Shown: positions 1,840-60,121 of the stretch, piece after piece
Numbering within the stretch: the first letter of the stretch is position 1
How the letters are laid out: every line of letters begins with the position of its first letter
DNA from: Euprymna scolopes
Taxonomy: Eukaryota
NCBI GenBank assembly: GCA_053919585.1
Contig: CM132784.1
Direction: 5' to 3' (one strand)
DNA length: 64,000 nucleotides
The notes under the pieces: model-generated
Seen by the model: only the letters and a program-made list of their open reading frames with translations
Told to the model about the DNA's origin: nothing
Database searches by the model: none
Translations under genes and position numbers: made by a program

Positions 1840-3140
1840 AAATTGCTTCTGTTGCAGTTTACAAGAATTCTGGCGACAGAACTGACCCACTTAATTATCA
1901 CCTCATTAGTTTCTGCTCTCTTTGCCAAAATCTTTGAGTCCTTAATCAGTCAAGCACTTCCCACCTCAGACAAACTTGTCCGACTGACTGAATTTAGGCA
2001 AGCCTGTTCTACTGTAGATATCCTAACTAATCTCTTAATATATATATACTAAGCACTGGATAAGGCAGGAGGAGCTAGGTTAATAGCCTTAGTAATCTAA
2101 GGCATTTAACAGGATTTGGCATGATGGTCCCATGAAAATCAAATCCTATTGTATTGCTGGGCATATACGTAACATAATCTTATCCTTAGATAAGTGAAAA
2201 CCCCAGATTGTCCTTGATGGTTGTGCATCAAAACATGAGGTCATACCACAGAGGTCAATCCTTGGACCTTTATTATTCCTGATATTCATAAATGACATCC
2301 CTGATAAAATTTTCTCTACGATGGGGGTATTTGCTAATGACACCATGCTCTATAACATACATGAGGGTAAAACAAATACCAATCTAAGGAATTGTTAAAA
2401 CTATAGAAAACCTCCAGTCTGTAGTAGAATGCGGCCATAACTGGTTGGTAATGTTTAATGGTGCCAAGACTAGGCTTATTTCCTTTAATAAATACAGGAA
2501 TTACACTGATTGCCATTCTTCCATCTCCTGGAGTTAATGTTCAGACAACATGAATTGGAACAAATACATTGAGATAATTGCCAAAGCTGCTGCAAGGAAA
2601 ATGGGTTCTCTCTACCATGCTAAAAGGCTACTCACACCTTAGAGGATCTTGTATCTCTACAAGCCCATGGTTTGCCCCTTGTATGGAGTATTGTTACCAC
2701 ATCTGGGCTGGTGCATCTGTTGTCTCACTGCTAAGCAGAGTTCAAGAGTTGTCAACCTAATAGGTCCTGCACTATCAACTCCAACTTCTGTTCCATTGCT
2801 GAAACGTGGCATCCTTGTGCTTACAAGAATTTCAATGGAAAGTGCTCTGATAAACTAAAAGCACTAGTACCACCTCGACAAACCAACAAGCAGCAAAATC
2901 CCACCCCTACACTAACGATCCCTAGATGCCGTAAAGCATTCTAATAACTTTTTTTCCCTCAAACTGCTTCACTTCGGAATTCCTTCCTATGCCTCTGCTT
3001 CCCTAACTGTACTGATATACAGAAATCAGTGCAATGTAAACTGACGTCTCGCCCAACTCCCTAAATAGTATCCCTGCAAATCTGGTTCCAAATAGTAGCC
3101 TCTCCTAACTGATTCTGTGCCTTGTTTGGGGTGAAATAAT
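1840..3140 (+). mobile_element. Decayed CR1/L2-group LINE, RT fragment
   Basis: PQRSILGPLLFLIFINDI (~2246-2300), FANDT (degenerate YADD) and PCMEYCYHIW motifs with many stops and frameshifts. Confidence 0.7.
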
Positions 3141-3948: not shown

Positions 3949-4034
3949 TTGATGTTGAAGCCCAGGTGGTTCAAGTTTTATTGGACCTTGCTGGTCCTGG
4001 TAGTCCTGATGACTTTCGAACAGAAGCTGCTGCA
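3949..4034 (+). CDS. PPP4R1: PPP4R1 exon: (I)DVEAQVVQVLLDLAGPGSPDDFRTEAAA
   Basis: tttcag/gtaagt; phase 1 to 0; similar to DVETKVCPVLIELTAPDSNDDVKTEAVA. Confidence 0.93.
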
Positions 4035-4149
4035 GTAAGTAACCACTTTTATTTTTCTCCTATTTAAAAATTGTCTTACACCATTTTTCTTTTCCAGCTC
4101 TACCTGCCTAATATATATGCGCACCTTTGAAATTGACTGGAATGTGTTC

Positions 4150-4216
4150 GGCTTGAAAGACACGGGTAGTGAGATGCTGTACTGTAGACTTCTTACTACC
4201 CTGTCTTTCGAGTGGT
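4150..4216 (+). ncRNA. mir-71: pre-mir-71; mature 5p TGAAAGACACGGGTAGTGAGATG at 4154-4176
   Basis: Mature sequence matches the miR-71 family; complementary 3p arm TCTTACTACCCTGTCTTTCGAG at 4191-4212 closes a hairpin; first member of the cluster, as is typical. Confidence 0.95.
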
Positions 4217-4419
4217 TCATTTTATTTTCATAACTTTGGTCCAATCCAGATCTTTAAAAAGCAAACTTGCAATATTATATACTTTTTTCCCAGTCTTAAT
4301 TTTTTAATTTTTTTTAATTTTTTTTTTATTATAATTACAATGCTGTCATTAATTTCCAAGGTGTTCATTCATTCCTTTTAGTTTTCCTCTTCAGTAAAAA
4401 CCTGTATGAGGAGCAGGTT

Positions 4420-4490
4420 GCGAAGGCATCAATGCTGGATGTCATAGTAATCTCCTTGGCCTATCACAGCCAGCTTTGATGAGCCTCGTC
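4420..4490 (+). ncRNA. mir-2: pre-mir-2 copy 1; mature 3p TATCACAGCCAGCTTTGATGAGC at 4462-4484
   Basis: Canonical miR-2a sequence; 5p arm GGCATCAATGCTGGATGTCATAG pairs with it. Confidence 0.95.
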
Positions 4491-4609
4491 TCCTGCCAAG
4501 CATCACTGACTTTTTATTTTGTCAACTTTTTATTTTTCCCTTTCTCTTAGTTAAGGTTTTATTTTTGTAGCAACTTGATTACAAAAATACACAATATCAT
4601 CTGCCATGT

Positions 4610-4682
4610 CTTTTACTGACCAAGTGGCTGCGACATGTTAAACATTCTCTTCATATCACAGCCTGCTTGGATCAGTATGAGG
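4610..4682 (+). ncRNA. mir-2: pre-mir-2 copy 2; mature TATCACAGCCTGCTTGGATCAGT at 4654-4676
   Basis: miR-2 seed ATCACAG; 5p arm ACTGACCAAGTGGCTGCGACATG is complementary and has its own matching changes. Confidence 0.92.
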
Positions 4683-5215
4683 CTTTCTGGTATCACATCC
4701 TGAGCCCTTAAGAAAATCTGTCAGGCTTTGAAAAACTTTACTTCCTCTTCCCTAATTGTGGAATCAAACCCCCCCCCTCCACATCTTTGAATTGATTATA
4801 GAACCAGTTTAATCCAATTTCCTGTACCGTTGATTAAATTTTATTTTTTACACACTTAATTGGAGAGTTGATTGGTAGTTTACAGACTTTAATAAAAGTC
4901 CATAAGTGGATTTTCTAATTTTTGTAAAAAATTTAATTCTCATAAATATAACAAGTGCATTAAAAACAATTAAAATCCGTACTTGTCACTTGTAAATTTT
5001 CATTAAGGAATATAAAGAAAATTCTATAAAATGCCCTCCATCAAGTGACTTAAATTAGAATTGTAGTTTTCAAGATTTCTTTTTCTTTGCTCTCCCGACT
5101 TCGTTGTAATGGATTGCTATTCATAAGATCTAATCGGTCTTTTTATTCCTTGAAATGAAATGGCTTTGTCTTGAATTCCAGTTTGCTATTCTTTTACCCA
5201 AGAGAGAAGGCACTG

Positions 5216-5284
5216 TTGCAACTCATCAAATAGCCGTGATATGCTGACAATGACTTATCACAGCTAGCTTTGATGAGCTGGGAC
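5216..5284 (+). ncRNA. mir-2: pre-mir-2 copy 3; mature TATCACAGCTAGCTTTGATGAGC at 5256-5278
   Basis: 5p arm CTCATCAAATAGCCGTGATATG forms a hairpin with the mature arm. Confidence 0.93.
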
Positions 5285-5541
5285 TCTGCTCTTTGCTGCT
5301 TCTGTTTTATTTTGCTGTTGCTATCGCCTCTTTGCTGCTGCCCCTGCTTTCACTTCCTTTCTTGCATCCCTATCAAAGTTTCTCTGTAATTGAAATAATT
5401 ACAACCACCTTTTTTGTAAAGTTGTAAAACCAAACTAAATCTTAAAGAAAGTTTTTTTTATTGAATTTATCCTAGACTTTGATTTAAAATACAAAATCAA
5501 ACTCCTAAACCTTGAACCACTATCCTGAGACCATGACCTTG

Positions 5542-5612
5542 TTGCAACTCATCAAATAGCTGGGATATGCTGACAATATGACGTATCACAGCTAGCTTTG
5601 ATGAGCTGGGAC
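5542..5612 (+). ncRNA. mir-2: pre-mir-2 copy 4; mature TATCACAGCTAGCTTTGATGAGC at 5584-5606
   Basis: 5p arm CTCATCAAATAGCTGGGATATG; near-duplicate of copy 3. Confidence 0.93.
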
Positions 5613-6010
5613 TAGGTTTCCTCCTCGTCGTTGGTTATAAATTTAGTGTTTGTCTCGTGTTTATAAGATCAGTGGAACAGTTGTTTGACCAGTCATACTT
5701 CTTGCACCAAGAATTCTCAAATGGTTACACATTGAAGTACTAACCAACCAGAACAGTGTTTAACTAAATTAACCAGAATTTTAAGTGACTGGCTGGAAAA
5801 TAATTACTAAAGTTTATCTGTTAAAGTCTAGTTCCTCATTTATTCCCAGGCAGTGACAGGTATTCTTGCAAGTTATATTATACATTGCTAAATGTTTCCT
5901 TTCTATATTTGCTTCTGTTGGTAAATTGTATTCCCTTCTCATTTACTAATGCAGATTTCCTACCTTTGTTTGCTACACCATGATTAAATTTAACCTTTGA
6001 CCTAAGCCGA

Positions 6011-6081
6011 TTGCAACTCCTCAAAGGGCTGTGATACGCTGCCAATATGACATATCACAGCTAGCTTTGATGAGCTGGAAT
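6011..6081 (+). ncRNA. mir-2: pre-mir-2 copy 5; mature TATCACAGCTAGCTTTGATGAGC at 6053-6075
   Basis: 5p arm CTCCTCAAAGGGCTGTGATACG forms a hairpin. Confidence 0.93.
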
Positions 6082-6209
6082 ATGGTTCTCTTGCACATAA
6101 GTTGTCCCTACAGCAGATGGACATTCTCCCCCACCGCTTTGCTTTTACAATCTGGCTGCAAAAGTAATACTGTTTACATGGCTGTAATGAAAGGTATCAT
6201 CTGACCACC

Positions 6210-6278
6210 TCGCAACTCATCAACTGGTTGTGATGTGCTATCTTTGACATATCACAGCTAGCTTTGATGAGCTGTGAC
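6210..6278 (+). ncRNA. mir-2: pre-mir-2 copy 6; mature TATCACAGCTAGCTTTGATGAGC at 6250-6272
   Basis: 5p arm CTCATCAACTGGTTGTGATGTG forms a hairpin. Confidence 0.93.
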
Positions 6279-7149
6279 TTGGGCATCATCAACATGCTGG
6301 AATCAATCCTCCTGCTTTGTCTGCATAAACATTTGATCCAATTAACACAAACTATTCCCCCTTAGTGGTGCTAATGGCAAAAATTTTAGTGGTTAAAATC
6401 ATTTACTTCCCAGAACTTTTTTTTTCCTATTGTGAAATGCCATTTTAGCTCCCTTCCAAAGTACTTTTAAAAATGATCTTCCAAGAGAGAAATTTCAGTT
6501 TTATAACTTTGCCTTTATTTCCATTCAGATTTCTGAAATGCAGGTTTAGTTGTGATATGTACCAGTCTGTTTCCTGTTGGGTTGCAACCACTGTTTATCC
6601 TAGTGATTTCTTTTGAATATTCAGAAACTTTTGTAAACAAAACCTTAAAAAAAAAAAAAAAAAAAATATGCATTTTGTTGGTGCTTTTGTCTCTTTCTGG
6701 TAAACAACTGAGTAAATGCATTGTTTTATAATATATAAGCTCAACTGAAATGATTCTGAAAATGAATGAAATTTGATTGTTTACTTAGCCGGTCACTGTT
6801 TAGAATACACTGCATGCTCTTTTCAGATTGTATACTATTGCAGGTGTAAACCAAATTTCAATTTGAACTGAGGTTATGTGTATGCTTAAGTTCTATTTGT
6901 AGATATTTGTTTTGTCTTAAAATTTTTGAATTCTTTAACTGTACATGATATCAAATGAAGTCTGAAAAGCTTCTTTCCATGATCTGTCAGTGGAGTGTGC
7001 ATGCCTTTTTTGTTCAGACTTTTACAGAAGGAGATTGCTCAGCCAGACAGGCTTCTTCCTCCTCTTCCTCCCCTTCCTTTTCCTTCCCTCCCTTTGGTGG
7101 GTGGGGGGAGCTGGGTGGTGGTGGTTGGGGGGATCAAGCTGACTTCTCT

Positions 7150-7227
7150 GTTTTGGGTCACCAAAGTGGTGGTGATGTGTTTCTAATTCCATTCCCATAT
7201 CACAGCCAGCTTTGATGAGCTCAAACA
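7150..7227 (+). ncRNA. mir-2: pre-mir-2 copy 7; mature TATCACAGCCAGCTTTGATGAGC at 7198-7220
   Basis: 5p arm GTCACCAAAGTGGTGGTGATGTG; extended lower stem TGTTTTGGG/CTCAAACA. Confidence 0.93.
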
Positions 7228-7253
7228 TGAGACTCGGCCTACAATGGCTAGCA

Positions 7254-7329
7254 TCTCCTTTCATCAAAGTGGCTGTCATACGTTACCCTTAATCTCATTC
7301 GTATCACAGCCTGCTTTGATGAGAGGAAG
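7254..7329 (+). ncRNA. mir-2: pre-mir-2 copy 8; mature TATCACAGCCTGCTTTGATGAGA at 7302-7324
   Basis: 5p arm TTCATCAAAGTGGCTGTCATACG forms a hairpin. Confidence 0.92.
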
Positions 7330-10300
7330 CCCTTCACTACAAACCTCCACGATGCCTCCTCTTCTAACAGAAACCAAACCATCATTCTACCCTGTGTATT
7401 TTGCTGCCGTCCCTCGACTTGATTGCCCCCCCTCCTACTGTATTAAATTTTATCGCTTTGATTTTATTTTAACATATGTATATTTGACAGTTTTTTTAAT
7501 CTTTTTTTATTCTTTAAATCTGAATAGTCTCGCTGATTCAACCAGATCTGTGTCCATCCCAAATGGAACTTATGAGATTTAATGATATATGATTGACAAA
7601 AAAAAATCTAATACTGTTCATCATACTGATAAGTGCCCCACCCATTCTCTTAACACAAAACTGCTTTGTTAGATGGTTTGGAATGCATTCCCAAAACTTT
7701 ACCTTGAGTTTTGCCTATTAAGAAAACATCTAAAAAATTTAAAGCTTTATTAGGCAGCATTCCTGTTTAAAAGGGGGGAAGGCATTGTGCCATCCTCTTA
7801 TTTCTCTGAGGTGCTTTGTCTAGAGCAAATCTGACTCTAATGTTCATAGTTAAAAATTAGTCGAGCCATTTCCATAGTTTGGCAAAGATCTTGCCTGGAA
7901 GTCTAAGTAGATAACCTAGCAAAATATCACAACTGTTTATGTGGTGGTAATAGAATGCTGAAAAATTTGTTTTGAAACCATCGACAAAAGGCCTTGATTT
8001 CTAATTTCTATCAAATTGGTCAGTGTTTTCAGTTGGTTTTCTCAATTTTGTAGTCCACCTTTTAAAGTTTGGTTAACTTGCGATTATCCAAAAAAAAAAG
8101 ACTTTATTCTATAAACTGAACCACTTGAAGTTTTCAGCAAATGCTCATTTTGACCCCCCCCCCTTTTTTTTTTAAATTTAAAAAAAAAAACTTTTATAAA
8201 CTTTATTACAAAAATTGCACCATTGGAAAATGGATTGAAATTTAAAGTATTTCTTGTTGGTTGTATACATAGCAGACAAATGTCAAAAATATCTTTTACA
8301 TACTTGGTCTAGAAATTTCAATATTGGTAGGATAAAAGTACCTCTTATCCCTCTTATAAAGGAAATTCATAGTTGTCTCTAATTTTTAAAGTCAAAAGTA
8401 TCATTAACCTTCAAATTTAAATAAGATTGAAAAAATTTACATTGTACAAAATATTTTGGGACTTAATGCTTTTCAGTTTAACTTATTTCTTGATGGTGCA
8501 TAAACTAAATTTTATCCAATTATCTAAACCATAAATCTCAACTAGTAAATCATATTCCTTAAGAGTGCATTTTTGGGAGAAGGGCACAACTGATTGTGCC
8601 CATGTTGCTCTTTAGAGGAATACCAAATCTATAATAATGAAACCCGTCTCTGTAAATATTTAACTAAGTTCTTAAACTACTAATCACATAATACTGAAAT
8701 TAACAGGCAATATTAATTGTACACCAAAGATGGTTTTAACAATTAAAAATGTGTTGATGAATTAGCAATGCACTGATTTCAAGGGTTTCTGCTAAAATTG
8801 TCATTTAAAAAGCCAAAGCAGTGTAGTTCCTTAAAAAAAAGATACAAAGAAAAACCGTTTTTGTTTAGAAATGAATTAATAACTAAGGTACATTATATAT
8901 TTTAAGAATTTGAAGCAAATAAATTGATAAAAATGTTAACCTTAAACTTAAACAGCATTTTCAGTAAGATTTTGTAATGAATGCCTGTACCACGCTTGTA
9001 TTAAGAATTTTGTCATGAAATTTGGAAAATAACTAAAGATGTGACTTCTAATAGTTTGATGTCCGAAATTCTTGTGACCACTCACTTTTGTTAAAGACTT
9101 CAACATGACAAGTATTAAATATTTTTCCAAATTTTCTTTGGACACTCGCTGTTAACAAAAACAAAGATTTAAGTGTAATTGTAACATATTTCCTTAACGT
9201 TTTCCTTTCCATAACAGAACTGAGCAATTTAAAATCATGAAAAATTTTCCTATTTTAAAAAGTATCTAAAAACTATCTGCAGCAGCAATACTATCAGCGC
9301 TAGCATTGCTGTAAACAAATGATTTAATTTTTTTTTCCAGAACAAATTAAAATTGACGACAAAATGTTCTTACTATTGGAGCTATTTTGTTACCAGAACA
9401 TAATTAGCTTACAGCTATTCAGTTATAGCAATCTCAACCAGTCTGGCGTTATTTCTGGTCAAATTTAAATTAACGGAAGGTATTAATCTACAATCCTTTT
9501 ATACACAAAATGCATTACACTTCAATTTTGTTTAACTTTTAATGGATACATGCAATTTTTAAGGAATTGCAGTATATTTGTGTGCATTTACTGCAAATTA
9601 TTTGGAAACCATTTTCTTGAGATTCAGTAGGATATTCTAATTCCTAGCACAAAAATATACCTATATGGTAAATTTCATTGTTTAATCTTGTGTTTTAACA
9701 AAGATGACATTTACTGAAAAAAGTAGTGTGAAAAAGTGACAAGATGCATGTAGTCTTAAAGATGGAAAAATATCCAAACGTGAAAGGCACAAAAATAGTC
9801 ATAACTTTAATTTTATTCAGATTTTAAAAATTCTATTCTAAGCTAATTAATCTTATATATATATATATATATATATATTGAAATATTTTGACCGATTTCA
9901 ATTTTTTCATGTGTATTGCTAAATGGATGATTAACATGTACTAATATATCGACAGGTTGATATGCAACTGTTCATTTAAACTTGTCAACATTTTTACTTT
10001 CTGCACATGCCCAAATTCAATTAATGTCTTCAAGTTAATATTAAATCTGTCTTGCCTATCTATCATTAGCTAATCAGGAGGCACAGCTGGAGTATTAAAT
10101 GTCTTGGTTTAAAATCTATTCCAGCTGATGGCACCCAAGCCCCCCCCCCTCACTATAATAAGCATAAATTATATAGTCCCCCTATAGGAGTCTAATGGAG
10201 TATTGAATTAGGTAATACTAGGATATTTTGTGAGTAGAACTAGTATTTAAGTGTTCCTGATTTTTCACTCTATAAGACTAGCAGGAATATCTGTCCAGAG

Positions 10301-10434
10301 AGGAGTTCATGAAGAATTATCTAGATTGCATGGCCAGTTTTAAGAAAACATTGATACAGTTTATTTTATGATTAAATTTTATGTTTAATCAGACAATTCT
10401 ACGTCCTGATTATCAAACGTGATTGGATAACATT

Positions 10435-10469
10435 GGCCTTCATGACAAGATCAGTGTAGTATCTGTTCT
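10435..10469 (+). pseudogene. Short U2 snRNA-like fragment (5' region including the branch-site recognition sequence)
   Basis: GGCCTTcatgacAAGATCAGTGTAGTATCTGTTCT versus U2 GGCCTTTTGGCTAAGATCAAGTGTAGTATCTGTTCT; 17-nt exact core; no rest of U2 visible. Confidence 0.6.
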
Positions 10470-13126
10470 GATGCTACATTTCACCTTTTCTGTCCTGTCA
10501 GAGTAATCCTTCATGATTGAGACAATTTTTACTTTTGTTCCTATCCAGAGTCCCCCTTTTATGGAGCTAGATTTCCTTATACTAAAAACTGACCTTATGT
10601 CTTACTTTGCCCTTATGGGGATGCAAGAAAATAGAAACATTTAAACTTGAACAAATTTAACTTGCACAAGTTCTATGGAGTGGGGCCACTGAAAAAAAAT
10701 TGTCTAGCATAAGAGTGAAACTAATTTTCTGTGGATTAACTGTTACCTTGTAAACATTCAATTACCAAATAATGCCATAACTTCATGTCCTATTAACAAA
10801 TATATTGGATAAATACAGCTAATTAATGAAAGTAAAATTATGTAGTTGCATTTACAAATCCTTAATTGCTATGAATCTCCTGCTACTGAGTAAGATGTAA
10901 CTAATTTTGTTTTGTCATTTCTATTGAAATGCATGAAACTTTCAGGAAGTTTGTTCAATTGGTTTTGAAGTTTTCTTTGGGTATGCTCTACACTTTACTG
11001 GATTCTAAGTGAGTTCCATGTTCATGGGATTCTCTTGAATCATCTTAGTTGGTCAAAAAACTAATTAACCCAAAAGTTAATCCTTGAAATTATGAAATAA
11101 CTGTCATTAACCCCAAACAGACTTTTCAATCTACATATTGAAAGAATGACAGATGTAGAACCATCTTCAACTAATGTTTCCGTTCGTTGAATGGACCTGG
11201 CTTGAAACATTAGTTTGGAAGTAACTTGTGTTCAAGGAGTAATAGGCTTCTAAAAAAATGTCAACTTATCGGTTGAGATTATTTTTCGGCATTTCACTTT
11301 ATTACTACCCCATAACCTAGCGATATCGCAACTGTTCATCTACTGGGTCTCTTTCCAGGCAAGATCTTCGGGTTGTAGTCAACAGGCATACTATGGAAAT
11401 GACTCGACTAATGTTTAAACAATATGAATATACTAGTCAGATTTGCCCTAGACAAAACCTCATTGTTGAACACCTACCTTTCTATGTTGCTCTCAGAATG
11501 CAACAAATGGTCAAGTGGGAGTCCTTTGACTACATGTGTTTATATAAAAATGTCATGTGCATTTGAAAAATCCATGGTGATCCAACTATAATTCTTTATT
11601 TCTAAAAATAAAAACTACTCGTGTCTTGTAACAATTGGTGCCAGTTAGAATTTTGATCTTCAATGGGCAATAGTTGATCATGTATAATCAAGTTGACTAA
11701 GTACCATCTGTTCCAGGATGGGTTAATATGCACTCTGCATGGAGTTATTAACAGATGAATAACCATTTTATTGTATTTCTTAAAGACTTCTGAATCAATT
11801 CTTTTCATTAGGTTTGTCTATATAACAAAGTACTGTATTTCAATAAACTTGTCTTGATCTATAAAAAGTTTAAAGAATTCAAGTTGATGTCTCTGCTCTC
11901 ATGTGATTTAACTGTTTAAAAAATGTACAACCAACCTTTATTTTATATTGGATATTAGGACAAGAATTATAAATTCCCCAAATGGAACAGTTTTGTCTTC
12001 TAAGATCAAAATTCAGATACGATGATACTTAGATTTCCTTTAGACTCCTTATTTTAAGTTTGATTTTAAATTAAGGATGATAAAAATCAATGAAAATTTG
12101 AAATATTTAAATTTTCAAATTTGTGATTTGTACCCTAAAAACCTTCAAATTCTCCCAACAAAACTGAAACTGAATATTTAGTGATGGCTAATACTTTTTT
12201 TATTTTTTACAGATCTTCTGTTCCCTTTGCATAAAGCTAAATTAAACTTAGCATATGTTTAAGCCCTCCCAAATTTGTCAACTGTGTTCCATAGTAATTA
12301 GACTGCTTAACTAGTATGAGTGCATAAATATATAAATTCCTTTATAAAGGAATTTCAATGTAAAAAAATTAAATTTCTAACATTATCTGAAATATATTTA
12401 ATTTCATTTGATCTGATTCCTTTTTAAAAGTTGAGTTAGTGTTTTATAAAAAATGCGAAAGAACAAATACTAATTGAAGCAGTTTTCTTAATGTTTAAGC
12501 CAAATTAATCATGAATGGCCTTAAAAAAACAAAAAACGCCAGGATTTTTTTTTTCCATAATATAAATCTGTCACTGTCAACTAGTAAATGAAATCATTAC
12601 AAGGGAGATAACTCTTTAAAGAACTTATTAGATTCTGTGTATTCTTCCTTCAGAGTAAATTAACATGCCATGTTTCATTCAATTGAACTGGCTTATTCTG
12701 AGGGAATCCAGGTAATTATCTCATTAAAGGTATTCTGTCCACACTACATGTAAATACAAACTATAGAGAAAAAACTCAAATTATTTAAATAAAAAAAAAT
12801 GGGAAGTCTCCAATAATTTTGACACCTGTCACATCGTTTTGACATGAGGCTATAGAGGTGAACATGATGTGCTCTTTACTCTGGATGCAGAACTGAGCTT
12901 TACTTTTACTTCTAGAATGTAAAGATGTATTCTCCTGATGTTGATATCTGGAATTACTTGCAAAAACTAAGGAAATCAAAATTGATACAAACATGAAAGT
13001 CGTTTATCCCTCTGAGAATCTTGCAAAAAATATACCATTTCAATAGTTTTAAAATTATTTAAATCTTATTTTTTCAATGGTTTTAATTTTACTTTTGTTC
13101 TATTTTATTTTAATTTGTACTCACAG

Positions 13127-13231
13127 CTAATGTGCAAGATGGCACCCTTGCTTGGCCGAGAGATGACGGAACGCTTATTTCTTGCTTACTTCGCTCAAAT
13201 GTGTATTGATCCTTTATTTCATGTGCGACGG
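13127..13231 (+). CDS. PPP4R1: PPP4R1 exon: LMCKMAPLLGREMTERLFLAYFAQMCIDPLFHVRR
   Basis: cacag/gtgagt; phase 0 to 0; matches IMCKMAPMVGKDITERL...FHVRK. Confidence 0.95.
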
Positions 13232-15461: not shown

Positions 15462-15620
15462 CTTGGTAGGTTCAGCTCTTTGTGTGAGGATGGTGTATGG
15501 GGGGTAAGAAAGGGTTGTGCAGAGTCCTTTATGGCTGTTGCATCAGTGTGCTCTGTGGAAGTGAGGCGAAATACACTAGCATCATTATTTGTCAGCTTAC
15601 TCTGTGATAGATCTCGATGG
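15462..15620 (+). CDS. PPP4R1: PPP4R1 exon: LGRFSSLCEDGVWGVRKGCAESFMAV...LLCDRSRW
   Basis: tttcag/gtaagt; 159 nt; HEAT repeat motif VWGVRK.CAE.FMAV. Confidence 0.95.
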
Positions 15621-15625
15621 GTAAG

Positions 15626-15657
<32 letters not shown>

Positions 15658-42699: not shown

Positions 42700-43787
42700 T
42701 AGACTTCATTGGTAGGGCATGCCGACTGCCCCCCTGCAGAGAGAAGTCCCTCAATGGGACTACCTGTTGGGCATAGGTAGTAACCCCTAATGTCTTAGGA
42801 CAGAATGCTGGTGGTTGAGCCGTCCATGACTTGGGGGGGAATTATGGCCCTGCAACATACCACTTCGACCTTTACCTTGACTAGAGGGAGGTTGGAGAGG
42901 CCCGATCTGATCAATCGACTAGTCATGCCAAGCCCTAACCCTTACACTGGCAAATGTTGATTACAACATCCAAAAAAAAAAAAAAAATCTAATATCTTAC
43001 TCTCACTACAAATACAGGCAAACCAAGTAAATGTTAGAAGGGCGGTGACAAAGGTCAGGCAATTGCTGAGATAAAACCACGACTGCTCCCTACCCAATGT
43101 TTCTATTAAACTTGGAAAATGAAACTAAAGGAAGAATCGGGAAACGATGGCACAAACTCAACCGGTTATCTTTTTTGTATCCTTAGGATGAAAGGGCGAA
43201 TAGGCCCCCAACATCTTCCACATTTGGGCTCCAAGGAGAGTGGGGAGCAAGAGATGAAAAACTAATCACTTATACATGGATCTAATAATTAAAAACCCCA
43301 GAAAAACCAAAAGAATTTGCTGACATTTCAGATGTCACCAGCTCAAACAGCAAGAATTCAATCTTGAACATATTGAAACCTTGGAACGAAAAAAGATCAG
43401 TGATCTGTCTCCATTCCTAATTGAAAAGGTATTAACTCAAAACATCAATCCTAAAACAGTTAAAAAAATGAAAAATGACAACCTACTTGTTACAATTAGA
43501 AAGATGCAAAAAACCTTAGGAATAGAAAAATTCTATATTTATAAATGCAGAACTTTTTCCCACGACAGGTTAAACATTTCAAAAGGCGTCGTAAGCCATG
43601 AACTTTCTTTGACTATGACAGAAATCAAAAATGCTCTAAGAAAACAAGGAGTAATTGATCATGTCCGAATCAACATAAAAAGGAATGTCAATCCATACCT
43701 ACAATGTATATACTAGCATTTAATACTCCTAAAATTCCAGAAGTCCTGGTGCAACCAGATCAGGCTGTCGGAAAATGACTCCTGACA
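42700..43787 (+). mobile_element. I/Nimb-like LINE 5' fragment: 5'UTR plus N-terminal ORF1 (gag-like)
   Basis: ORF 43381-43716 LSPFLIEK...TVKKMKNDNLLV...NISKGVV followed by YILAFNTPKIP, typical of ORF1 in this group. Confidence 0.75.
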
Positions 43788-44049
43788 CAAATGCACCTAC
43801 ATTAACACATTTGTTTTTTTCCTTGCTTTTTGTACAACTAAAGCATGTTCTGCAAAGCCCAAAACAAAAACAGCCCCCCCACCCCTCCCATTTTTTTTTT
43901 TTTTTTTTGTCATTCCACTCCTACTTCCCTACTTGTTTCATAACTTAAAAAATACCAACCAAAATAATAAAAACAACCAAGCTAAAATCCATGAATAAAT
44001 ATTTATAGAAAAAAACAACTGGAGATATAGTTTTTCCAATCAGATTCTA

Positions 44050-45880
44050 CTAGACCCCGTCGGCAGGGCATCAGAATGTGCTGACTGTCCTCCTCCCATG
44101 CAGAGTGTAGGGGGTCCCTCAATGGGGCTACCTGTTGGCTGTAGCTAGCGAACCGTAATACCATTAGGTCGGGATCCTGGTGGTTAAGAGACTTGGAGGT
44201 CGGGTTTTAGTACCCCCACTTCCCTTACTAGGCTAGACGGGCCGGGCCGTCGGAAGGATCCAACCGATCAATTGGCTGGTCACGTCAAGCCCCACCATAT
44301 ATTACCCATCCCATAAACCTACCATTAACACATCATACCTATCCCTTCCCCACAAATAACATCTACTTCCTAATATATGGTGGAAAGTAGTAGCTGAGGG
44401 TCAATCAACTAAGTGAAAATATGACATAGCTGCAAACCTTTTAAATTACTACATATCCCATAGTAACATCAAAGGAAGATAGGTGCTCGTGAAAGATATC
44501 ACTAAAATAGAGTATATCATCTTTGTTGAGCCTGGCCGCCTAAACAAAATAGGAACACTGGAGGAGATGGAGGTAGAAGACAAAACGCCCCTTGTCAAAT
44601 AAAATGACAGAACACAAAAACTCAAAAGTTAATCATTCAATGGAATTGCAGAGGTATTAAACCTAATTTTAACAAACTCCTTATACTTATTTCCCTATAC
44701 AACCCAGCAGTCATCTGTCTACAAGAAACATTTTTACAACACAATAAGCACCTAAAACAAAACTATGAACAGTATCATTATATCCATAATACAGGCTTAC
44801 GAACCAATGAAGGCACATCAATTCTAGTAAGAAACCACTGTCCAAACCAATCTTCAGGCAGTCCCAACTCGCGTCACGCTCAAAACTCTCACAATCTGTT
44901 CTCTATACTTTCCCCCGAATGAACTAATAATACTGAATTAGAAAACCTGATCAATTACCCTCACCTTTCATCCTTCTAGGATACTTTAACAGCCATAGCA
45001 TACGATGGGAATGCAAAACAATTAATTCCAAAGGAAACAAAATCGAACAATTTATAAACATGCCTTCTCAACCAAAAAGAACCCACCTACATAAACCCAA
45101 CAAATGGTACAACCAGTGCCAGTGATCCAAATACATGGAAACTTACGATGATCCCTGTGGAAGCAATCATTTTCCCATCATAATAGACTACAATAGTACT
45201 GTCCAAAACAACATACCAAGATGGAACAGAGCAGACTGGATTAAATTCAAACTATGCTAGCAACAATTAATAAACATAAAATCTAATCAATGGAAGACTT
45301 CACCCTAATCCTAATAGCTAAAGAATGCATCCCTAAAAATTGCCCTCCAAATAAGAACAAACCCTGGTTCAATCAAGAATGCAAAAAAAGCCATTAGAAA
45401 AAGGCAGCGCTAAGAGAATTCAAAAAGCAACCCATAACCAATAATCTCGTAGAATATAAACGACTCGGAGCAAAAGCACGTAAAACAATGAAGGAATCAA
45501 AACAAAATTGTTGGCAACAATTCATCAACTTCCACCAAACCCACAACTATCTGGAAAATGATTAGAAAAATCTCAGGGAAAGATAACTCCGCCCCAAACA
45601 AACACCTCCTCACTAAAAACAAAATAACTGAAAACAAAATAACTGAAAACAAAGATATAGCTGATACACTGGCAAAAACTTTCGCTGACAATTCATCATT
45701 GAAACGATACAAAAAACAATTTCAAATGAAAGAAAAATCAGGAAAAATATTTTCGAAAAATCTACGACTCCAAGAACCCTACGAGATCTTCTCACTAGAC
45801 GAACTTTAAAGATGCCATAGAAAAATCCCACAACTCGGCAGTGGGACCAGATGAGATCCACTAGTTTCCTAAAAAAAAAA
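44050..45880 (+). mobile_element. I/Nimb-like LINE fragment A1: 5'UTR, ORF1 tail, APE endonuclease and linker
   Basis: IIQWNCRGI, ICLQET, GSNHFPII, PWFNQEC, WKMIRKISGK and SAVGPDEIH, all frameshifted. Confidence 0.8.
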
Positions 45881-46851
45881 AATATACCTCCTGAAATGGA
45901 GAAACTATCTATCAAAAATAAATACAAATGTAAAAAGGTCTGGGACATGATCCAAAAATTTCAGGGAAAAGTAACAGCAACCTGACCTATAATAAACAAA
46001 AAAAATACTAGCAAGAAAGAAATGGTAAATTGTCTTGCTGAAACTTTTGCAAAAAACCTCCTCCAAAAATTCCAAATTAAGGAAAAAGTAGAAAAGGAAA
46101 AACTCTAGTTTCAGACAAATAATACAGAAAAATACAACCAGCCATTCTCTAAAAATGAATTGAAAGTATCCCTAAGCAAAGCTCATGACTCTGCTGTGGT
46201 CCTGATCAAATCCACTATCAATTTATAAAATTTCCTGATACATCTACAGATTACCTACTACAAATATTTAATATTTGGGAAAGTGGCAATGTTCTTGAAA
46301 TATGGAGGCAGGCCATAGTAATCCCTATACCTAAATCATCAAAGAACTCTCCAAATCCCATGAATTACTGACCTATAGCACTCGCTAGCTGTATTTCTAA
46401 AATTATGGAAAGAATGATTAACAGCAGATTAGTATGGTACCTTGAGACAAATAATCTGATTACAGATTATCAGTCAGGATTTAGGAACAAAAGAAGCCCT
46501 GTGGACCATCTTATTGGGCTAGAAACCTTCATCAGTGAAGCCTTTATCAATAAAGAACATTTAACAGCAGTCTTTTTCGATATTGAAAAAGCATACGACT
46601 CCGCATGGAGGCATGGCATAAAAGATTTACAAGAGCTAGGATTAAAAGGCAGAATGCCCATTTTCATCACACAATTTTATGATGTACAATTAAGTGATAC
46701 CCTATCCATCAGTAAAAAAAAAAACGGTGGTGGGGTACCACAAGGAAGCATCCTGTCTGTTAAATTTTTTAGCATTAAAATAAATAGCATCGTTAAAAAT
46801 ATAAATGCAGGAACAGAATGTGCCCTCTGGATGATTTGCTGATCTGCTATA

Positions 46852-50500: not shown

Positions 50501-51005
50501 CTTGGTAAGATGTTCTTTTTCACATCTTTTGCCTTGTCATAGAGGACAAAAGCATAAAATAAATAAATTATAAAAAAGGCACGTTTTATATTCTACGTTT
50601 GATTTAATTGACAATAAAGTTGATATTATTTTTCTTGAAAACCATTTTTTTTATAAACTTGTAAATAAACTGCATTTTCTAAAGGTTAAGAACGAATTTT
50701 CATGAAGTTTCAATTTCTGTTTTGTTTATTTTATGCAAGTAAATTAAATTTACACCTTATTTTGATGTTATTATGATCTAAAGTTTATTTTTACTAATAG
50801 TTTAAAAACAATAAATATTTATCAGTACCAGCAGTGGAAAATTAAGTTTAAAATGATATTAAAAGAATTGTTTTTGGAATCAGAAATTAGGTTAAAATTT
50901 TTCTGATTCCAATATCTCAAAAAGTTCTGATTCAGTTGAGTATTGCATATTCTGCTCATTGTGAATTATTATTTCACATCTTTCTTCCAGAGCAATAAAT
51001 TAAGA

Positions 51006-53665
51006 ATGTCTTCTGAACCAAGGAAACGAGAGGGAGGAGATACATCATTGATGACAAGTGCTCCTCAATGTTCTTTTGGATTACTAATGAAGAGTGCATG
51101 TCACCGCAATCTGAAGCCATCTTCAACACCAATAACTGCATTAGAGCATGATGTAAGAACTGTGCTCAAATTAAGAGCTGGTGTCACACTCACTGATGAA
51201 ACCGTTGCTAACATTTGCAGGTATCACGAATTTCATTTGGGGCATTACTTTGAGAAAAAATATACAAAGTGCTGCAACATCTTTTTGAAGCACAAAAGAA
51301 AGGTAAAGGGTGATCGTGCTATCAAGTTAGACATGGCTGAGATGCTAAAGCAGAAGGGCTACCATGTTGTTCCTGGCTGGAAGCTTTGCCGTCACTGTGA
51401 AGTAGCTGCCAAGAAGTTAGAAGATACAAGTGAAACAGAAGGAAGTGACAACCAAGACCTTGAAAATGAGTCGCAAATTGAACAAAAGAGAGAGAAACTG
51501 AATGACAGTCTAATGATGTTTGATATATCCCCTATAAAAACCGGTAGAATGCAGAAGCACACAAAAATCAATATTGTCAGAGAGAAATTAGAAAGAAACT
51601 ATGAAATGCAAGTAGAGGCAGCTGCCAAAGTCCTTAACATCTCTAGCCCTGAATTAGGAAGCCCTATTAGCAGCCAAACGAGTCAAACGGATTTAGTGGC
51701 AAAGGCAAAAGATTATGATTGTTTGTTGGATGCAATGAAGGACAAACTTGAGAATAAAGAAATGAAAACCAGTGAGAGGATCCAGTTGATGACTTTAGCT
51801 CCGGAAAGTTGGTCTCGAAAAGAGGTGTCTGAATATTTCAATGTCTCTGAATATATAGTACGTGAAGCACGGCAACTGAAAAAGGATCGAGGTATTCTTT
51901 CATTGCCACAGAAAAAGAAGGGGAGAGGTCTCTCAAAAGAGGTTATCAATTCTGTCTTGGCTTTCTATGAGGACAATGAATTTTCACGGTTAATGCCTGG
52001 AGGGAAAGATTTTGTGAGCATTGGTAATAAAGTTCATGTCCAGAAACGGCTCCTATTATGCAATCTTAAGGAGCTTTATGTAGCTTACAAAGAAAGCTAT
52101 CCTGAACACAAAATAGGTCTTTCAAAGTTCTGTGAGCTCCGTCCAAAATGGTGCGTCACCGTCTTGACATCAGGTTCTCATTCAGTTTGTGTTTGCACCC
52201 ACCATCAAAATACCAAATTGCTTGTTGACTGCTTTGTTTCAACTGTCAAGACTCAGCTCAGAAGGAAAGCTGAAGAATCCAGAGATGAGAGTGCTGCTAA
52301 TGTACCAACTGAAAATCCCAATTTTAATATCACTTACAAAGATTTGATGGCCTTGGTAGTTTGCGACACCAATAGTCTTGAATGTATGGTCCACCGTTGT
52401 CCTAAATGCCCAGGTTTCCCTGCTCTAGAGAAGTATATCAGAGATAAATTTACTGAATTGGAAATTGACAGTGAGATGTCATATAGTCAGTGGGAGAGTG
52501 TGGATAGGACAATGCTACGGACACAGATGGCTGATGTAGATTACTTCATAGAGATATTGGTATACAATGTTGATAATCTAACGACCCATTCCTTCACAGC
52601 AAAGAGCCAAGCGCAGTATCTAGAGAAGAGAAGAAATAACTGAGACCGAATGTATACTTCTCTTGGACTTTGCGGAAAATTATCACTACGTGGTGCAAGA
52701 TGAGATCCAGGGATATCACTGGAACAAAGACCAGTGTACCATACATCCAGTGGTAATTTATTACAAAGATAACAATGGTAAACTTCAACAGATCTCATTA
52801 TGCATCATTTCAGATGACCTTGAGCATGACACCTGTTTTGTGCATGAACTGCAAAGAATGGTGATGTACATCAAAGAGAAATTTCCCTGGATCAAGAGTG
52901 TAGAGTACTTCAGCGATGGCTGTGCTGCCCAATATAAAAACTTCAAAGCATTTATTAACCTTTGCCATCACTCATCAGATTTTGGAATTGATGCAACTTG
53001 GGCATTTTTTGCAACTAGCCATGGCAAATCACCCTGTGATGGAATTGGTGGGGCTGTCAAACGCAAAGTTCTCCGTGCCAGCTTGCAAAGGCCAATAAAA
53101 GACCAAATACTCACTTTTCATGCTGTTGCAGACTTTTGCAGATCATCGATCACTGGTATCATGTTTCTAAAGATCGACAAAGACATGGTTTCAGTTCGAG
53201 AGAAACTTCAAATGAGATATAAACTGGGAGATACTGTGCCTGGTACAAGGAGCTGTCACTATTTCAAACCAACTTCTCAGTTTACTATTCAGGGCAAGCA
53301 ACTGAGTGCTGACACAACGATCTTTATCGACCATTCTTTCCTGGACATGCCTACGCCGCTAGATGAAACTCTGGAGTTGCTCAAATGCAATGACTACATT
53401 ACTTGCATTTTTGATGGGTATTGGTGGTTAGCATTGATTGAGTGTCAACAGGGAAGAGAAAGATCTTACTTGCAAATTCCTGCATCCACATGGACCATCA
53501 CATCAATTCCACTGGCCAACTAATAGGGATAGAGGCTATATTCCACTAAGCAAGGTCGTTATGAGAGTGCAGACCCCAAGTATTTCAGTGAATGGTAGAA
53601 CATATTTCATCACCAAGGAGGAGAAAAATAAGACTCAGAACTATTTTGACAGATTAAGTCAATAG
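51006..53665 (+). pseudogene. Sola2-like transposase (~880 aa if repaired) with two frameshifts at ~52632 and ~53443
   Basis: ORFs 50943-52643, 52663-53523 and 53438-53665 join as ...YLEKR/EITETECILLLDFAENY... and ...WWLALIE/SVNREEKDLTCKFLHPHGPS; Cys/His-rich N-terminus; acceptor ttccag at 50990 upstream of ATG 51006. Confidence 0.85.
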
Positions 53666-54482: not shown

Positions 54483-55507
54483 TATAGATCAAAATATATT
54501 ACAAGAATAGAATGCCATTTGCAACTGTCTCAACAAAAATGGAAAAGAAAAAATGGGTTTTAATTTTCAAAAGAAAAAAAACAAGCCATCCATTTCTGCC
54601 AAATCCAGAAAATGCACCATGACCCAATATTGAAACTGGACAATGAAATTGTACCTTTAATTGATCAATATAAATATTTGGGCGTCATATATATATAAAG
54701 CCATCCAACTCTTAAAGGTAGGAGCTCACAGACTAGGGTGGGGACAAAGACTACAATTAAATTATACAGATCCCTACCTCCCCAGTGGTAAGTCTATATT
54801 TAGAAACAGATGAACCCTCATTGTCACTTAGAAGAGAAAAACTAGGACTACAATATTATACAAAATTGGCTTCATGTCCAACTAATCCTGCCTGTAAATG
54901 TCTTCCACCCTCAATACAAAAACCTCTTTGAAAGAAAAGAAAAATGCTATAAAACCATTCAGCCTACGTATGGAAGAATCCATAAAGGCCGAATACATTG
55001 CAACAACATGAATCTGTAAAACCTAAATATCCCCACTGGCTGACAAAACAACCAAAAATAATATCAGACTTAATTATCCTAAAACCAATCCAATCATACA
55101 AGAAAAATTCCAAATAAAGATAAGTATTCCAAACACTCAACAATTTATACAGACAGTTCAAAAAGACAGATGTGCAGCCATACACAATAGAACAAACCAA
55201 ATCAAGATTACCAGACAAAGCCTCCATTTACAGTTCCGAAGTATCAGCCATTGGTATGGCAATTGATCTTATAGACTCCTCTAAAGATAAAGAATTTACT
55301 GCTCGGATCCAAATCAGTACTTGAAACACTGGAAAACAGGAAGCCAACAAACCAATAATCACCAAAACCCTAAATAGAATTGATATTCCTAACGATAAAA
55401 GCATCTTTGTTGTTGATCTAGTCATATTAAGAGAGTAATGAGAGCTGACAAAGCAGTAAAAGGAAGCATTAAAATTGACCCCAACCAAAGAAGATCCCTC
55501 ATACTGA

Positions 55508-58500: not shown

Positions 58501-59923
58501 AGCAAAAATGCCAAAAAAGCAATGAAAATTTTAAAAGTAATATCAAAAACAGGCTGGGTAGCAGACCAAGACACAATGTTAAAAATATACCAGGCACACA
58601 TAAGATCAAAATTAGATTATGGCTGCATCACATATAGCTCCACCCGTAGATAAATCCTATCTCCAAAAATCATTAACCCTACAAAATCAAGGATTAAGAC
58701 TTAGTCTGGGAGCATCTCAAACATCACCCATGGAAAGCCTATACATAGAAGCCGATGAATCCCCCTCTACATTTAAGATGGCAGTAATTAATAACACAAT
58801 ACGCAATAAAACTACAAAGTGATCCAAACAACCCAATACATAAAAAAGCCCTTCAACCTACAATATACAGACTTTCATATCAGCAAATCAAAAAACATAC
58901 CTTCTTTTGGATATCGCATCAAAGAAATATTAGCTCAAATTAACGAAAACCGTAAGTAACACACAGGAAACAACCATGGACTTTAAAAGACCCAAGCACT
59001 GATCTGACTCTTACTAAATACCAAAAAAACAATACCAGCAACTTAATAAAAAGCTGCTTGGGTGAACTCAGAAAAGTACAACACAAATATACACTGATTC
59101 TTAAGCCCTTGGATATAAATTTAAACTATAATAGAATCAAGTGTTAGCCCCAGGAAGGAGCCCCTTGATCTCTTCAAACTAACAAAAGTAAAATTTAAAA
59201 AAAAAAAAAAAAAATGGAGCCAAAACAGGAACAGGTGCGGCATGTACAGATGGAAAGAACCCTCTCCAAATAAGACTTCCCATCAACGCATCAATATACA
59301 CAGCAGAACTACAAGCAATCAAAATGGCACTTGAATTAAGAACAACAATAAGAAAAAATTCATTATATACCGATTCTTTGTCATGCATCGTAGCTCTATA
59401 GAAGAAATAGAGCATCCTTATATATTAGATATAATGAACAAATACAATGAAATTATTGAAAAAGGTAAAGAAATAATCTTTGCTTGGATACCAAGTCATG
59501 TTGGTATTCCAGGTAATGGAGAAGTTGACAAATTAGCCAAAGAAGCCATTAGCAAAAATATAACAAACATCAAAATACCATACACAGATTTCAGCAGAAA
59601 AATAAGGGAATATAACAAAAATAAATGGCAAACAGAATGGGACACATATACTCAAAACAAATTACGCGAACACCAACCCATAATAAAAGACAAAACAACA
59701 ATAAAAGGACGAAGAGAAAATATCGTTCTAATCAGAATCGGACATACCAAATTAACGCTCACCTAATCGAAGCAACAGAAAAACCAAAATGCAATTTCTG
59801 CGACAGATGACAATAAAACATTAACAGAATGTCAAAAATACAAAACTACCAAAAATAAATATTATACAGTAAACGAAATTAAAGAATTGTTTCACAAGGT
59901 GACACCACACCAAATCATCAAAT

Positions 59924-59962
<39 letters not shown>

Positions 59963-60121
59963 CTCTTCAAATCACTTTAAACTGTAAAAACTCAAAAATT
60001 TTAAAAATACATAACTTAAAAAAAAAAAAAAAAAAAAAAAAAAACCTCTACTAAATACATAGCTTGGCATTAAATGACCCACAGTGGTTGATATGCCGTG
60101 AAGCCCCAATAAACCAACCAA
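55508..60121 (+). mobile_element. LINE B (I/Nimb-like), 5'-truncated within ORF1, with decayed APE-RT-RNase H ORF2
   Basis: 12-bp TSD CCCTCATACTGA at 55496-55507 and 60122-60133; LQWNCRGL, MGDFNAH, GSDHYPI, VPQGSILS, WIPSHVGIPGN; 3' AATAAA plus (CCAA)n tail. Confidence 0.9.

What the first reader, a model, noticed from the sequence alone, without database searches (positions are those of the whole stretch)
4150..7329. Expanded intronic mir-71/mir-2 cluster (1 + 8 hairpins) in PPP4R1
Seen: nine sense-strand hairpins within 3.2 kb, starting ~120 nt after an exon donor, with mir-71 first and eight seed-identical mir-2 copies of four mature types. Known: a mir-71/mir-2 cluster inside a phosphatase-4 subunit gene intron is an ancestral protostome arrangement. 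Inference: the absence of miR-13-type arms (TATCACAGCCATTT) and the presence of the ...CCTGCTTGGATCAG type point to a lophotrochozoan; eight copies is a large dose from one host transcript. None of this is visible in the ORF track.
Basis: partly seen in the sequence, partly recalled or inferred. Interest (0 to 1): 0.7.

Follow-up and report, generated by a model that had tools for sequence, protein, structure and literature searches.

The report
Conserved mir-71/mir-2 cluster in PPP4R1 intron
The nine hairpins are a genuine copy of the ancient mir-71/mir-2 microRNA cluster, in the same intron of the phosphatase-4 regulatory subunit gene as in other animals; it is well supported but ordinary, because an octopod has the same eight-copy layout and the mature sequences are already published from molluscs.

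Summary
Rfam finds mir-71 at 4148-4217 and six mir-2 hairpins above the curated cut-off. Two more mir-2 hairpins (4422-4488, 4613-4680) score just below it. All nine lie on the + strand and fold well (z -3.5 to -9). The miR-2 core motif occurs 8 times in the 5.9-Gb genome, all here, and mir-71 occurs once.

The host is a PPP4R1 orthologue, and the cluster lies in intron 4035-13126, 113 nt after the donor. I fetched PPP4R1 loci from seven other animals. The same intron holds:
- mir-71 plus 8 mir-2 (and one seed-mutated copy) in Argonauta, with the mature types in the same order;
- mir-71 plus 5 mir-2 in a clam, a nemertean and a sea spider;
- mir-71 alone in a sea urchin and in amphioxus;
- nothing in Nematostella, where the intron is about 130 nt.

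Between the window and Argonauta, mature arms are 115/115 identical, star arms 96/102, loops 57% and flanks 66%.

The mature types match published mollusc miR-2a, miR-2b-1 and miR-2d. [quoted passage not shown]

The cluster is real and known. The expansion from 5 to 8 copies is shared with an octopod, so it is not special to this genome.

The parts
3949..4034 (+). PPP4R1 exon immediately upstream of the cluster (encodes ...DDFRTEAAA); donor GTAAGT at 4035
   Evidence: Translation. tblastn finds the homologous exon directly upstream of mir-71 in 7 other species. Sequence.
4035..13126 (+). Host intron (9,092 nt) that carries the whole cluster. Against Argonauta, only the hairpins and the exon edges are conserved.
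   Evidence: Donor, acceptor AG at 13125-13126. blastn against the Argonauta intron.
4148..4217 (+). mir-71 hairpin; predicted mature 5p arm at 4154-4176
   Evidence: RF00832 at 64 bits. Fold -40.2 kcal/mol, z -6.3. Only copy in the genome. Mature 23/23 and star 20/20 identical to Argonauta.
4422..4488 (+). mir-2 hairpin 1 (miR-2a type); predicted 3p arm at 4462-4484
   Evidence: RF00047 at 37.3 bits, below the cut-off. z -3.5. 1:1 orthologue in Argonauta with mature 23/23 and star 20/20 identical.
4613..4680 (+). mir-2 hairpin 2 (miR-2d type, ...CCUGCUUGGAUCAGU); 3p arm at 4654-4676
   Evidence: RF00047 at 43.8 bits. z -6.1. Mature arm identical to lgi/cgi-miR-2d (PMC4941716). Orthologue in Argonauta.
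5219..5282 (+). mir-2 hairpin 3 (TAGC or miR-2b type); 3p arm at 5256-5278
   Evidence: RF00047 at 47.5 bits. z -3.9. Mature arm identical to cgi-miR-2b-1.
5545..5610 (+). mir-2 hairpin 4 (TAGC type); 3p arm at 5584-5606
   Evidence: RF00047 at 52.8 bits. z -5.8.
6014..6079 (+). mir-2 hairpin 5 (TAGC type); 3p arm at 6053-6075
   Evidence: RF00047 at 47.2 bits. z -3.7.
6213..6276 (+). mir-2 hairpin 6 (TAGC type); 3p arm at 6250-6272
   Evidence: RF00047 at 47.4 bits. z -7.2.
7154..7224 (+). mir-2 hairpin 7 (miR-2a type); 3p arm at 7198-7220
   Evidence: RF00047 at 58.6 bits. z -3.6. Orthologue in Argonauta with mature 23/23 and star 20/20 identical.
7257..7328 (+). mir-2 hairpin 8 (...CCUGCUUUGAUGAGA type); 3p arm at 7302-7324. 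The 5p arm is fully conserved and may be a second product.
   Evidence: RF00047 at 56.9 bits. z -9.0. Mature 23/23 and star 21/21 identical to Argonauta. An Octopus Mir-2 5p arm with the matching seed site is reported as expressed.
13127..13231 (+). PPP4R1 exon immediately downstream of the cluster (LMCKMAPLLGRE...)
   Evidence: Sequence. tblastn finds the homologous exon in all 7 comparison loci.
15462..15626 (+). PPP4R1 HEAT-repeat exon used to identify the host gene
   Evidence: phmmer against 1.84 billion representatives gave 118 hits at E<=1e-10. All of the looked-up hits that carry a descriptive name are called PPP4R1.

Best explanation
This is the cephalopod orthologue of the ancient polycistronic mir-71/mir-2 microRNA cluster. 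[quoted passage not shown]

Shown here:
- the family identity of the hairpins;
- the identity of the host gene;
- that the same intron carries the cluster in other animals;
- selection on both arms of the hairpins;
- that these are the genome's only canonical mir-71 and mir-2 genes.

Inferred from general knowledge of microRNA biogenesis:
- The intron is transcribed as part of the PPP4R1 pre-mRNA.
- The Microprocessor (Drosha/Pasha) crops each hairpin, and Dicer releases duplexes of about 22 nt.
- Argonaute is loaded mainly with miR-71-5p (seed GAAAGAC) and with miR-2-3p species that all share the seed AUCACAG. The eight copies therefore add up to one seed dose with four different 3' ends.
- Transcription from the host promoter is the likelier source, because mir-71 begins only 113 nt after the 5' splice site and leaves no intronic room for its own promoter.

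The step from 5 to 8 copies comes from four copies of the miR-2b (TAGC) type, and Argonauta has the same four.
For: Family identity and folding:
- Rfam scores and hairpin folds with z -3.5 to -9.
- Seed motif 8 times against 0.38 expected.
- Genome-wide, the 19-nt miR-2 motif has 8 hits, all in this cluster, with a control count of 0. The mir-71 motif has 1 hit.

Host gene:
- Best hits are named PPP4R1.

Same intron in other animals, delimited by the two homologous exons, with contents from Rfam and seed scans:
- Argonauta: mir-71 plus 8 mir-2 plus 1 seed-mutated copy.
- Mercenaria, Tubulanus and Nymphon: mir-71 plus 5 mir-2 each.
- Lytechinus and Branchiostoma: mir-71 only.
- Nematostella: empty.

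Selection on the hairpins:
- The order of mature types is identical in the window and Argonauta.
- In five 1:1 orthologous hairpins, mature arms are 115/115 identical, star arms 96/102, loops 57% and flanks 66%.
- Outside the hairpins and exons, nothing in the intron is conserved.
- Double-sided compensatory pairs occur at mature positions 10 (C-G to U-A), 16 (U-A to G-C), 20 (G-C to C-G) and 23 across 32 hairpins.

Literature:
- Mature arms equal published mollusc miRNAs (PMC4941716).
- Ovu-Mir-71 and Ovu-Mir-2 genes are expressed in Octopus small-RNA data (PMC9699675).
- The mir-71/mir-2 linkage is ancestral (PMC3384581).
- C. elegans mir-71 and mir-2 lie in ppfr-1 introns.
Against: - There is no expression or processing evidence from this organism.
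- Two hairpins score below the Rfam cut-off.
- In C. elegans, intronic mir-71 and mir-2 have their own promoters, and their expression only partly overlaps that of ppfr-1 (PMC2835999). Host-driven transcription cannot be assumed.
- Orthology of the four TAGC copies between the window and Argonauta is not resolved. All the window copies are closest to a single Argonauta copy, so the duplications may be partly independent or homogenised.
Confidence: 0.9

Rival explanations
1. The cluster is real but is an independent transcription unit. A promoter upstream of or overlapping the preceding exon, or internal promoters between hairpin groups (for example in the 538-nt and 877-nt spacers), would drive it separately from PPP4R1, as reported for C. 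elegans mir-71 and mir-2.
For: In C. elegans, the sequences upstream of intronic mir-71 drive GFP on their own, and expression only partly overlaps that of ppfr-1 (PMC2835999; PMC3410857). The hairpins fall into groups separated by spacers of 0.5-0.9 kb.
Against: Only 113 nt separate the 5' splice site from pre-mir-71 here, about 135 nt in Argonauta and about 75 nt in Tubulanus. All hairpins are on the sense strand. No spacer sequence is conserved with Argonauta apart from the short stretch around the last two hairpins.
Confidence: 0.25
2. Only some of the eight mir-2 hairpins are processed. The redundant TAGC copies or the two sub-threshold hairpins could be decaying duplicates that contribute little mature RNA.
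For: Two hairpins fall below the Rfam cut-off. Hairpins 4422, 5219, 6014 and 7154 have the weakest z-scores, about -3.5 to -3.9. Argonauta carries one copy whose seed has mutated, which shows that copies can drift.
Against: All eight keep a perfect 23-nt mature arm. The two sub-threshold hairpins have 1:1 orthologues in Argonauta with identical mature arms and 20/20 and 15/21 identical star arms. Neutral spacer sequence has diverged beyond alignment over the same period.
Confidence: 0.15
3. The hairpins are copies of a repeat or transposon-derived inverted repeat that happens to contain the miR-2 seed, and are not microRNA genes.
For: The genome is 5.9 Gb and repeat-rich, and the window holds LINE and DNA-transposon sequence.
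Against: The 19-nt motif occurs only 8 times in the whole genome, all here. Similarity between copies stops at the edges of the hairpins. The hairpins are conserved in position and order in distant phyla.
Confidence: 0.01

Closest known systems
Protostome mir-71/mir-2 cluster (Marco, Hooks and Griffiths-Jones 2012, PMC3384581)
   Same: mir-71 comes first and is followed by tandem mir-2 copies on one strand within a few kb. The dominant product comes from the 3p arm with seed AUCACAG. Copy number varies through tandem duplication.
   Different: There are 8 copies here, against 5 in the clam, nemertean and sea spider loci I examined. There is no miR-13 subtype, which is the arthropod form. Four of the copies are of the miR-2b (TAGC) type.
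C. elegans mir-71 and mir-2 in introns of ppfr-1, the PP4R1 gene (Isik et al. 2010, PMC2835999; Hsieh et al. 2012, PMC3410857)
   Same: The host gene family and the sense orientation are the same.
   Different: In the worm the two genes lie in different introns and have their own promoters. Here all nine hairpins share one intron, and mir-71 lies close to the 5' splice site.
Mollusc miR-2 family: cgi-miR-2a, cgi-miR-2b-1 and cgi-miR-2d, and lgi-miR-2d (PMC4941716)
   Same: The mature 3p sequences of three of the four types in the window are identical to these published RNAs.
   Different: The published work is on oyster and limpet. The fourth type (...CCUGCUUUGAUGAGA) was not looked up.
Argonauta PPP4R1 locus (L017) and the MirGeneDB Octopus vulgaris genes Ovu-Mir-71 and Ovu-Mir-2-o21/-o24 (PMC9699675)
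   Same: Argonauta has the same intron, the same order of mature types, and 100% identical mature arms. Octopus small-RNA data show that Mir-71 5p, a Mir-2 3p and a Mir-2 5p arm are expressed.
   Different: Argonauta has one extra copy with a mutated seed (TCTCACAG) that is absent from the window. Its intron is 2.9 kb against 9.1 kb here.

Membership tests
mir-71 (Rfam RF00832) | Covariance-model score at or above the curated gathering score | tested here: met
   64 bits against a cut-off of 50, with the full-length model 1-73 matched.
mir-71 (Rfam RF00832) | Mature product on the 5p arm with seed GAAAGAC | tested here: met
   The 5p arm at 4154-4176 starts UGAAAGAC. It is 23/23 identical to Argonauta and 1 nt different from Mercenaria, Nymphon and Tubulanus. 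Arm usage itself was not observed.
mir-2 (Rfam RF00047) | Covariance-model score at or above the curated gathering score (45.5 bits) | tested here: met
   Met for six hairpins, at 5219, 5545, 6014, 6213, 7154 and 7257, with 47.2-58.6 bits.
mir-2 (Rfam RF00047) | The same score criterion for the two remaining hairpins (4422-4488 and 4613-4680) | tested here: not met
   They score 37.3 and 43.8 bits. I still place them in the family for three reasons: the 3p arm and seed are perfect, each has a 1:1 orthologue in Argonauta with an identical mature arm, and 4613 is identical to the published miR-2d. The Argonauta orthologues are also below the threshold, at 41.7 and 40.6 bits.
mir-2 (Rfam RF00047) | 3p-arm mature sequence beginning UAUCACAGC (seed AUCACAG) inside a hairpin of about 65-72 nt | tested here: met
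   All eight copies meet this.
mir-71/mir-2 cluster | mir-2 copies linked to mir-71 on the same strand within 10 kb, with mir-71 at the 5' end | tested here: met
   The cluster spans 4148-7328 on the + strand with mir-71 first.
mir-71/mir-2 cluster | Discrete mature and star reads with Drosha/Dicer 2-nt overhangs (the MirGeneDB criteria) | not testable with these tools
PPP4R1 as host gene | The flanking exons belong to a PPP4R1 orthologue, and the cluster lies in the homologous intron | tested here: met
   The best hits of exon 15462-15626 are named PPP4R1. The exon pair around the cluster aligns with the exon pair around mir-71 in six other bilaterian PPP4R1 genes and around the empty intron in Nematostella.
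Mirtron (considered and rejected) | The hairpin ends coincide with the splice sites of a short intron | tested here: not met
   The first hairpin starts 113 nt after the donor, and the last ends 5.8 kb before the acceptor of a 9.1-kb intron.

The most novel reading that the evidence does not exclude
The pairing of mir-71 with one particular PPP4R1 intron may be one of the oldest fixed microRNA/host-gene associations. The intron is present, short and empty in Nematostella. It holds mir-71 in amphioxus, a sea urchin, a sea spider, a nemertean, a clam and cephalopods, and mir-2 copies were added only in protostomes. In the three lophotrochozoan lineages sampled, mir-71 lies only about 80-260 nt from the 5' splice site. 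This suggests that cropping of the hairpins is mechanically coupled to splicing, or to the output, of PPP4R1 mRNA. I found no explicit statement of this pan-bilaterian same-intron conservation in the held literature, but specialists or MirGeneDB may already record it.
Probability: 0.25. Interest if true: 0.45.

Novelty: already known. Interest (0 to 1): 0.22.

Why it matters
The result gives a clean annotation of the only mir-71 and canonical mir-2 genes in this 5.9-Gb cephalopod-type genome, which ORF-based annotation cannot see.

The comparative by-product is modestly useful. Eight animals from seven phyla were compared, counting the window's own. They show that the intron came first, that mir-71 arose in it before protostomes and deuterostomes split, and that the mir-2 copies were added in protostomes. 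The cephalopod lineage then went from five to eight copies by amplifying the miR-2b type.

None of this overturns current views of microRNA evolution.

Tried and rejected
- **Bacterial promoter and terminator scan.** This is meaningless for an animal intron and I ignored it.
- **RNAalifold on a MAFFT alignment of 27 hairpins.** It returned no structure because the 5' arms of the subtypes were misregistered. I replaced it with per-hairpin folds and a count of pair types at each mature-arm position.
- **PPP4R1 look-ups.** Those for the Mercenaria X1 and Tachypleus X4 isoforms were not on record. The Tachypleus and Anabrus genes are too long for their DNA to be returned.
- **Feedback on the host.** The roughly 1.2-2.4 kb after the last coding exon holds no miR-2 seed site and only one weak miR-71 7mer-A1 site. 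There is no support for autoregulation.
- **miR-13-type arms genome-wide.** There are five pattern matches against about 3 expected. The four whose DNA was fetched do not fold, so I reject them as chance.
- **A relic of Argonauta's extra seed-mutated copy.** I looked between hairpins 4613 and 5219 and found none.
- **Literature on mir-71 with PPP4R1.** The searches gave only the C. elegans ppfr-1 papers.
Full report
**Observation.** Rfam at its curated thresholds places a mir-71 precursor at 4148-4217 (64 bits) on the + strand. It also places six mir-2 precursors there, at 5219-5282, 5545-5610, 6014-6079, 6213-6276, 7154-7224 and 7257-7328 (47-59 bits). With an E-value threshold, two more + strand mir-2 matches appear just under the 45.5-bit cut-off: 4613-4680 (43.8 bits) and 4422-4488 (37.3 bits). 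Every hairpin scores higher on + than on -.

All nine fold as single hairpins of -27.5 to -40.2 kcal/mol, with z-scores of -3.5 to -9.0 against dinucleotide shuffles. TATCACAGC occurs 8 times on +, where 0.38 is expected. The count, coordinates, strand and order are therefore confirmed.

**Host gene and intron.** The + strand carries a series of HEAT-repeat exons. I searched one of them (15462-15626) by reference against 1.84 billion representative proteins, and 118 hits reached E<=1e-10. [quoted passage not shown] The best hit is from Argonauta, followed by Tachypleus, Mercenaria, Nymphon, Anabrus, Lytechinus, Tubulanus, Branchiostoma and Styela.

The exon before the cluster is 3949-4034, with donor GTAAGT at 4035. 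The next exon is 13127-13231. The intron is 9,092 nt, and pre-mir-71 begins 113 nt into it. Exons were handled one at a time.

**Comparative test.** I fetched PPP4R1 genomic loci for seven species. In each I located the two exons homologous to 3949-4034 and 13127-13231. Contents of the intron come from Rfam and from seed scans with folding. In every bilaterian the intron between these two exons holds mir-71 on the sense strand:

| Species | Group | Intron contents |
|---|---|---|
| Argonauta | cephalopod | mir-71 + 8 canonical mir-2 + 1 copy with seed mutated to TCTCACAG |
| Mercenaria | bivalve | mir-71 + 5 mir-2 |
| Tubulanus | nemertean | mir-71 + 5 mir-2 |
| Nymphon | sea spider | mir-71 + 5 mir-2 |
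| Lytechinus | sea urchin | mir-71 only |
| Branchiostoma | amphioxus | mir-71 + the amphioxus-specific mir-4890 |
| Nematostella | cnidarian | same intron position, about 130 nt, no miRNA |

The mir-71 part of it goes back at least to the common ancestor of protostomes and deuterostomes. The literature adds that in C. elegans both mir-71 and mir-2 lie in introns of ppfr-1, the PP4R1 gene, although in different introns (PMC2835999; PMC3410857). It also states that the mir-71/mir-2 linkage is ancestral (PMC3384581).

**Evidence of selection.**
- The window and Argonauta show the same order of mature types: a, d, b x4, a, c-like.
- Five hairpins are clear 1:1 orthologues.
- Summed over those five, the mature arm is 115/115 identical, the star arm 96/102, the loop 57% and the 40-nt flanks 66%.
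- blastn of the two introns finds only the exon edges and the hairpins. Nothing between 7378 and the next exon is conserved.
- Across 32 mir-2 hairpins from five species, the few variable mature-arm positions change together with their partners: position 10 C-G to U-A, position 16 U-A to G-C, position 20 G-C to C-G, and position 23 C-G, U-A or A-U.

This is the classic signature of processed microRNA precursors. It also supports the two hairpins that fall short of the Rfam cut-off.

**Uniqueness in the genome.** The genome has 5.9 Gb in 925 contigs, and the window is C2:130,448,001-130,512,000.
- The 19-nt pattern shared by the eight 3p arms occurs 8 times, all here, and the reversed control occurs 0 times.
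- The mir-71 pattern occurs once.
- A miR-13-type pattern gives five hits, near the chance expectation of about 3. The four I could fetch do not fold.

The cluster is therefore not a repeat family. It is the genome's whole canonical complement of these two families, with one caveat: the Rfam-based whole-genome search scored only the best 60 candidates.

**Which animal.** The PPP4R1 exons are 78-84% identical at the protein level to Argonauta, 54-73% to Mercenaria, and lower to the other species. The cluster is collinear with that of Argonauta. The miR-2d type (...CCUGCUUGGAUCAGU) is published from Lottia, Crassostrea, Tegillarca and Biomphalaria. The TAGC type equals cgi-miR-2b-1. Earlier notes of this scan also call the genome cephalopod, of squid or cuttlefish type. 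I treat those notes as a lead that agrees with my own test. The lophotrochozoan inference is supported, and more precisely the animal is a cephalopod, probably not an octopod.

**How it most likely works.** By analogy with canonical intronic clusters, the hairpins are cropped by the Microprocessor from the PPP4R1 primary transcript and diced. They are then loaded as miR-71-5p and as miR-2-3p species that share one seed. Eight precursors therefore raise the dose of a single seed family while varying the 3' end.

The 113-nt distance from the splice donor, which is similarly short in Argonauta, Tubulanus and Mercenaria, leaves no intronic space for a separate promoter in front of mir-71. This favours host-driven transcription. 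The C. elegans precedent of independent intronic promoters keeps the alternative alive at about 25%.

Several 5p arms are perfectly conserved. Octopus data list a Mir-2 5p arm as expressed, with its own conserved target sites. Some precursors may therefore yield two functional products. I found no seed sites for either family downstream of the last PPP4R1 coding exon, so there is no sign of feedback on the host.

**What could not be done.** I did not try again.

**Verdict.** This is a real, well-conserved and functionally constrained cluster whose kind, host gene and mature sequences are already known. Eight copies is a moderate expansion, against five in three other protostome lineages, and it is shared with an octopod. 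The same-intron conservation across Bilateria is a tidy result, but it is likely familiar to specialists. Interest is low.

Noticed in passing
L017:10893-10958 (Argonauta PPP4R1 intron): An extra mir-2-like hairpin (48 bits) whose 3p arm starts TCTCACAG instead of TATCACAG, so its seed is changed. The window has no counterpart between hairpins 4613 and 5219.
   Followed up: partly
L017:17618-17687 (-): A tRNA gene (61.7 bits) lies antisense in a later intron of the Argonauta PPP4R1 gene.
   Followed up: no
L022:29388-29478 (+): In Branchiostoma the same PPP4R1 intron holds mir-4890 (112 bits) about 1.1 kb downstream of mir-71. A different, lineage-specific microRNA has joined mir-71 there in place of mir-2.
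   Followed up: no
L023:3295-3427 (Nematostella): The homologous intron exists in a cnidarian but is only about 130 nt long and holds no microRNA. The intron therefore predates mir-71.
   Followed up: partly
window 7257-7281 and the 5p arms at 5222-5243 and 5548-5569: Three 5p arms begin UCAUCAAA. The matching 8-mer site (TTTGATGA) is the one listed for Ovu-Mir-2-o24 in the Octopus target tables, which suggests that 5p products of some copies are functional.
   Followed up: partly
window 5219-6276: All four TAGC-type hairpins are closest to the same Argonauta copy (L017:11462-11534). The four Argonauta copies share a 5p motif (CTGGGATATG) that only one window copy has. This points to homogenisation or partly independent duplication.
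   Followed up: partly
window 2198-2395, 43300-46840 and 55500-60500: Reverse-transcriptase and endonuclease-like open frames (LINE fragments) lie in and after the PPP4R1 gene. Long ORFs at 50940-52640 and 52624-53520 lie inside the Sola2-like transposon that another note on this window describes.
   Followed up: no
window 7040-7140: A CT-rich then G-rich low-complexity stretch lies directly upstream of hairpin 7154. It is not conserved in Argonauta.
   Followed up: no
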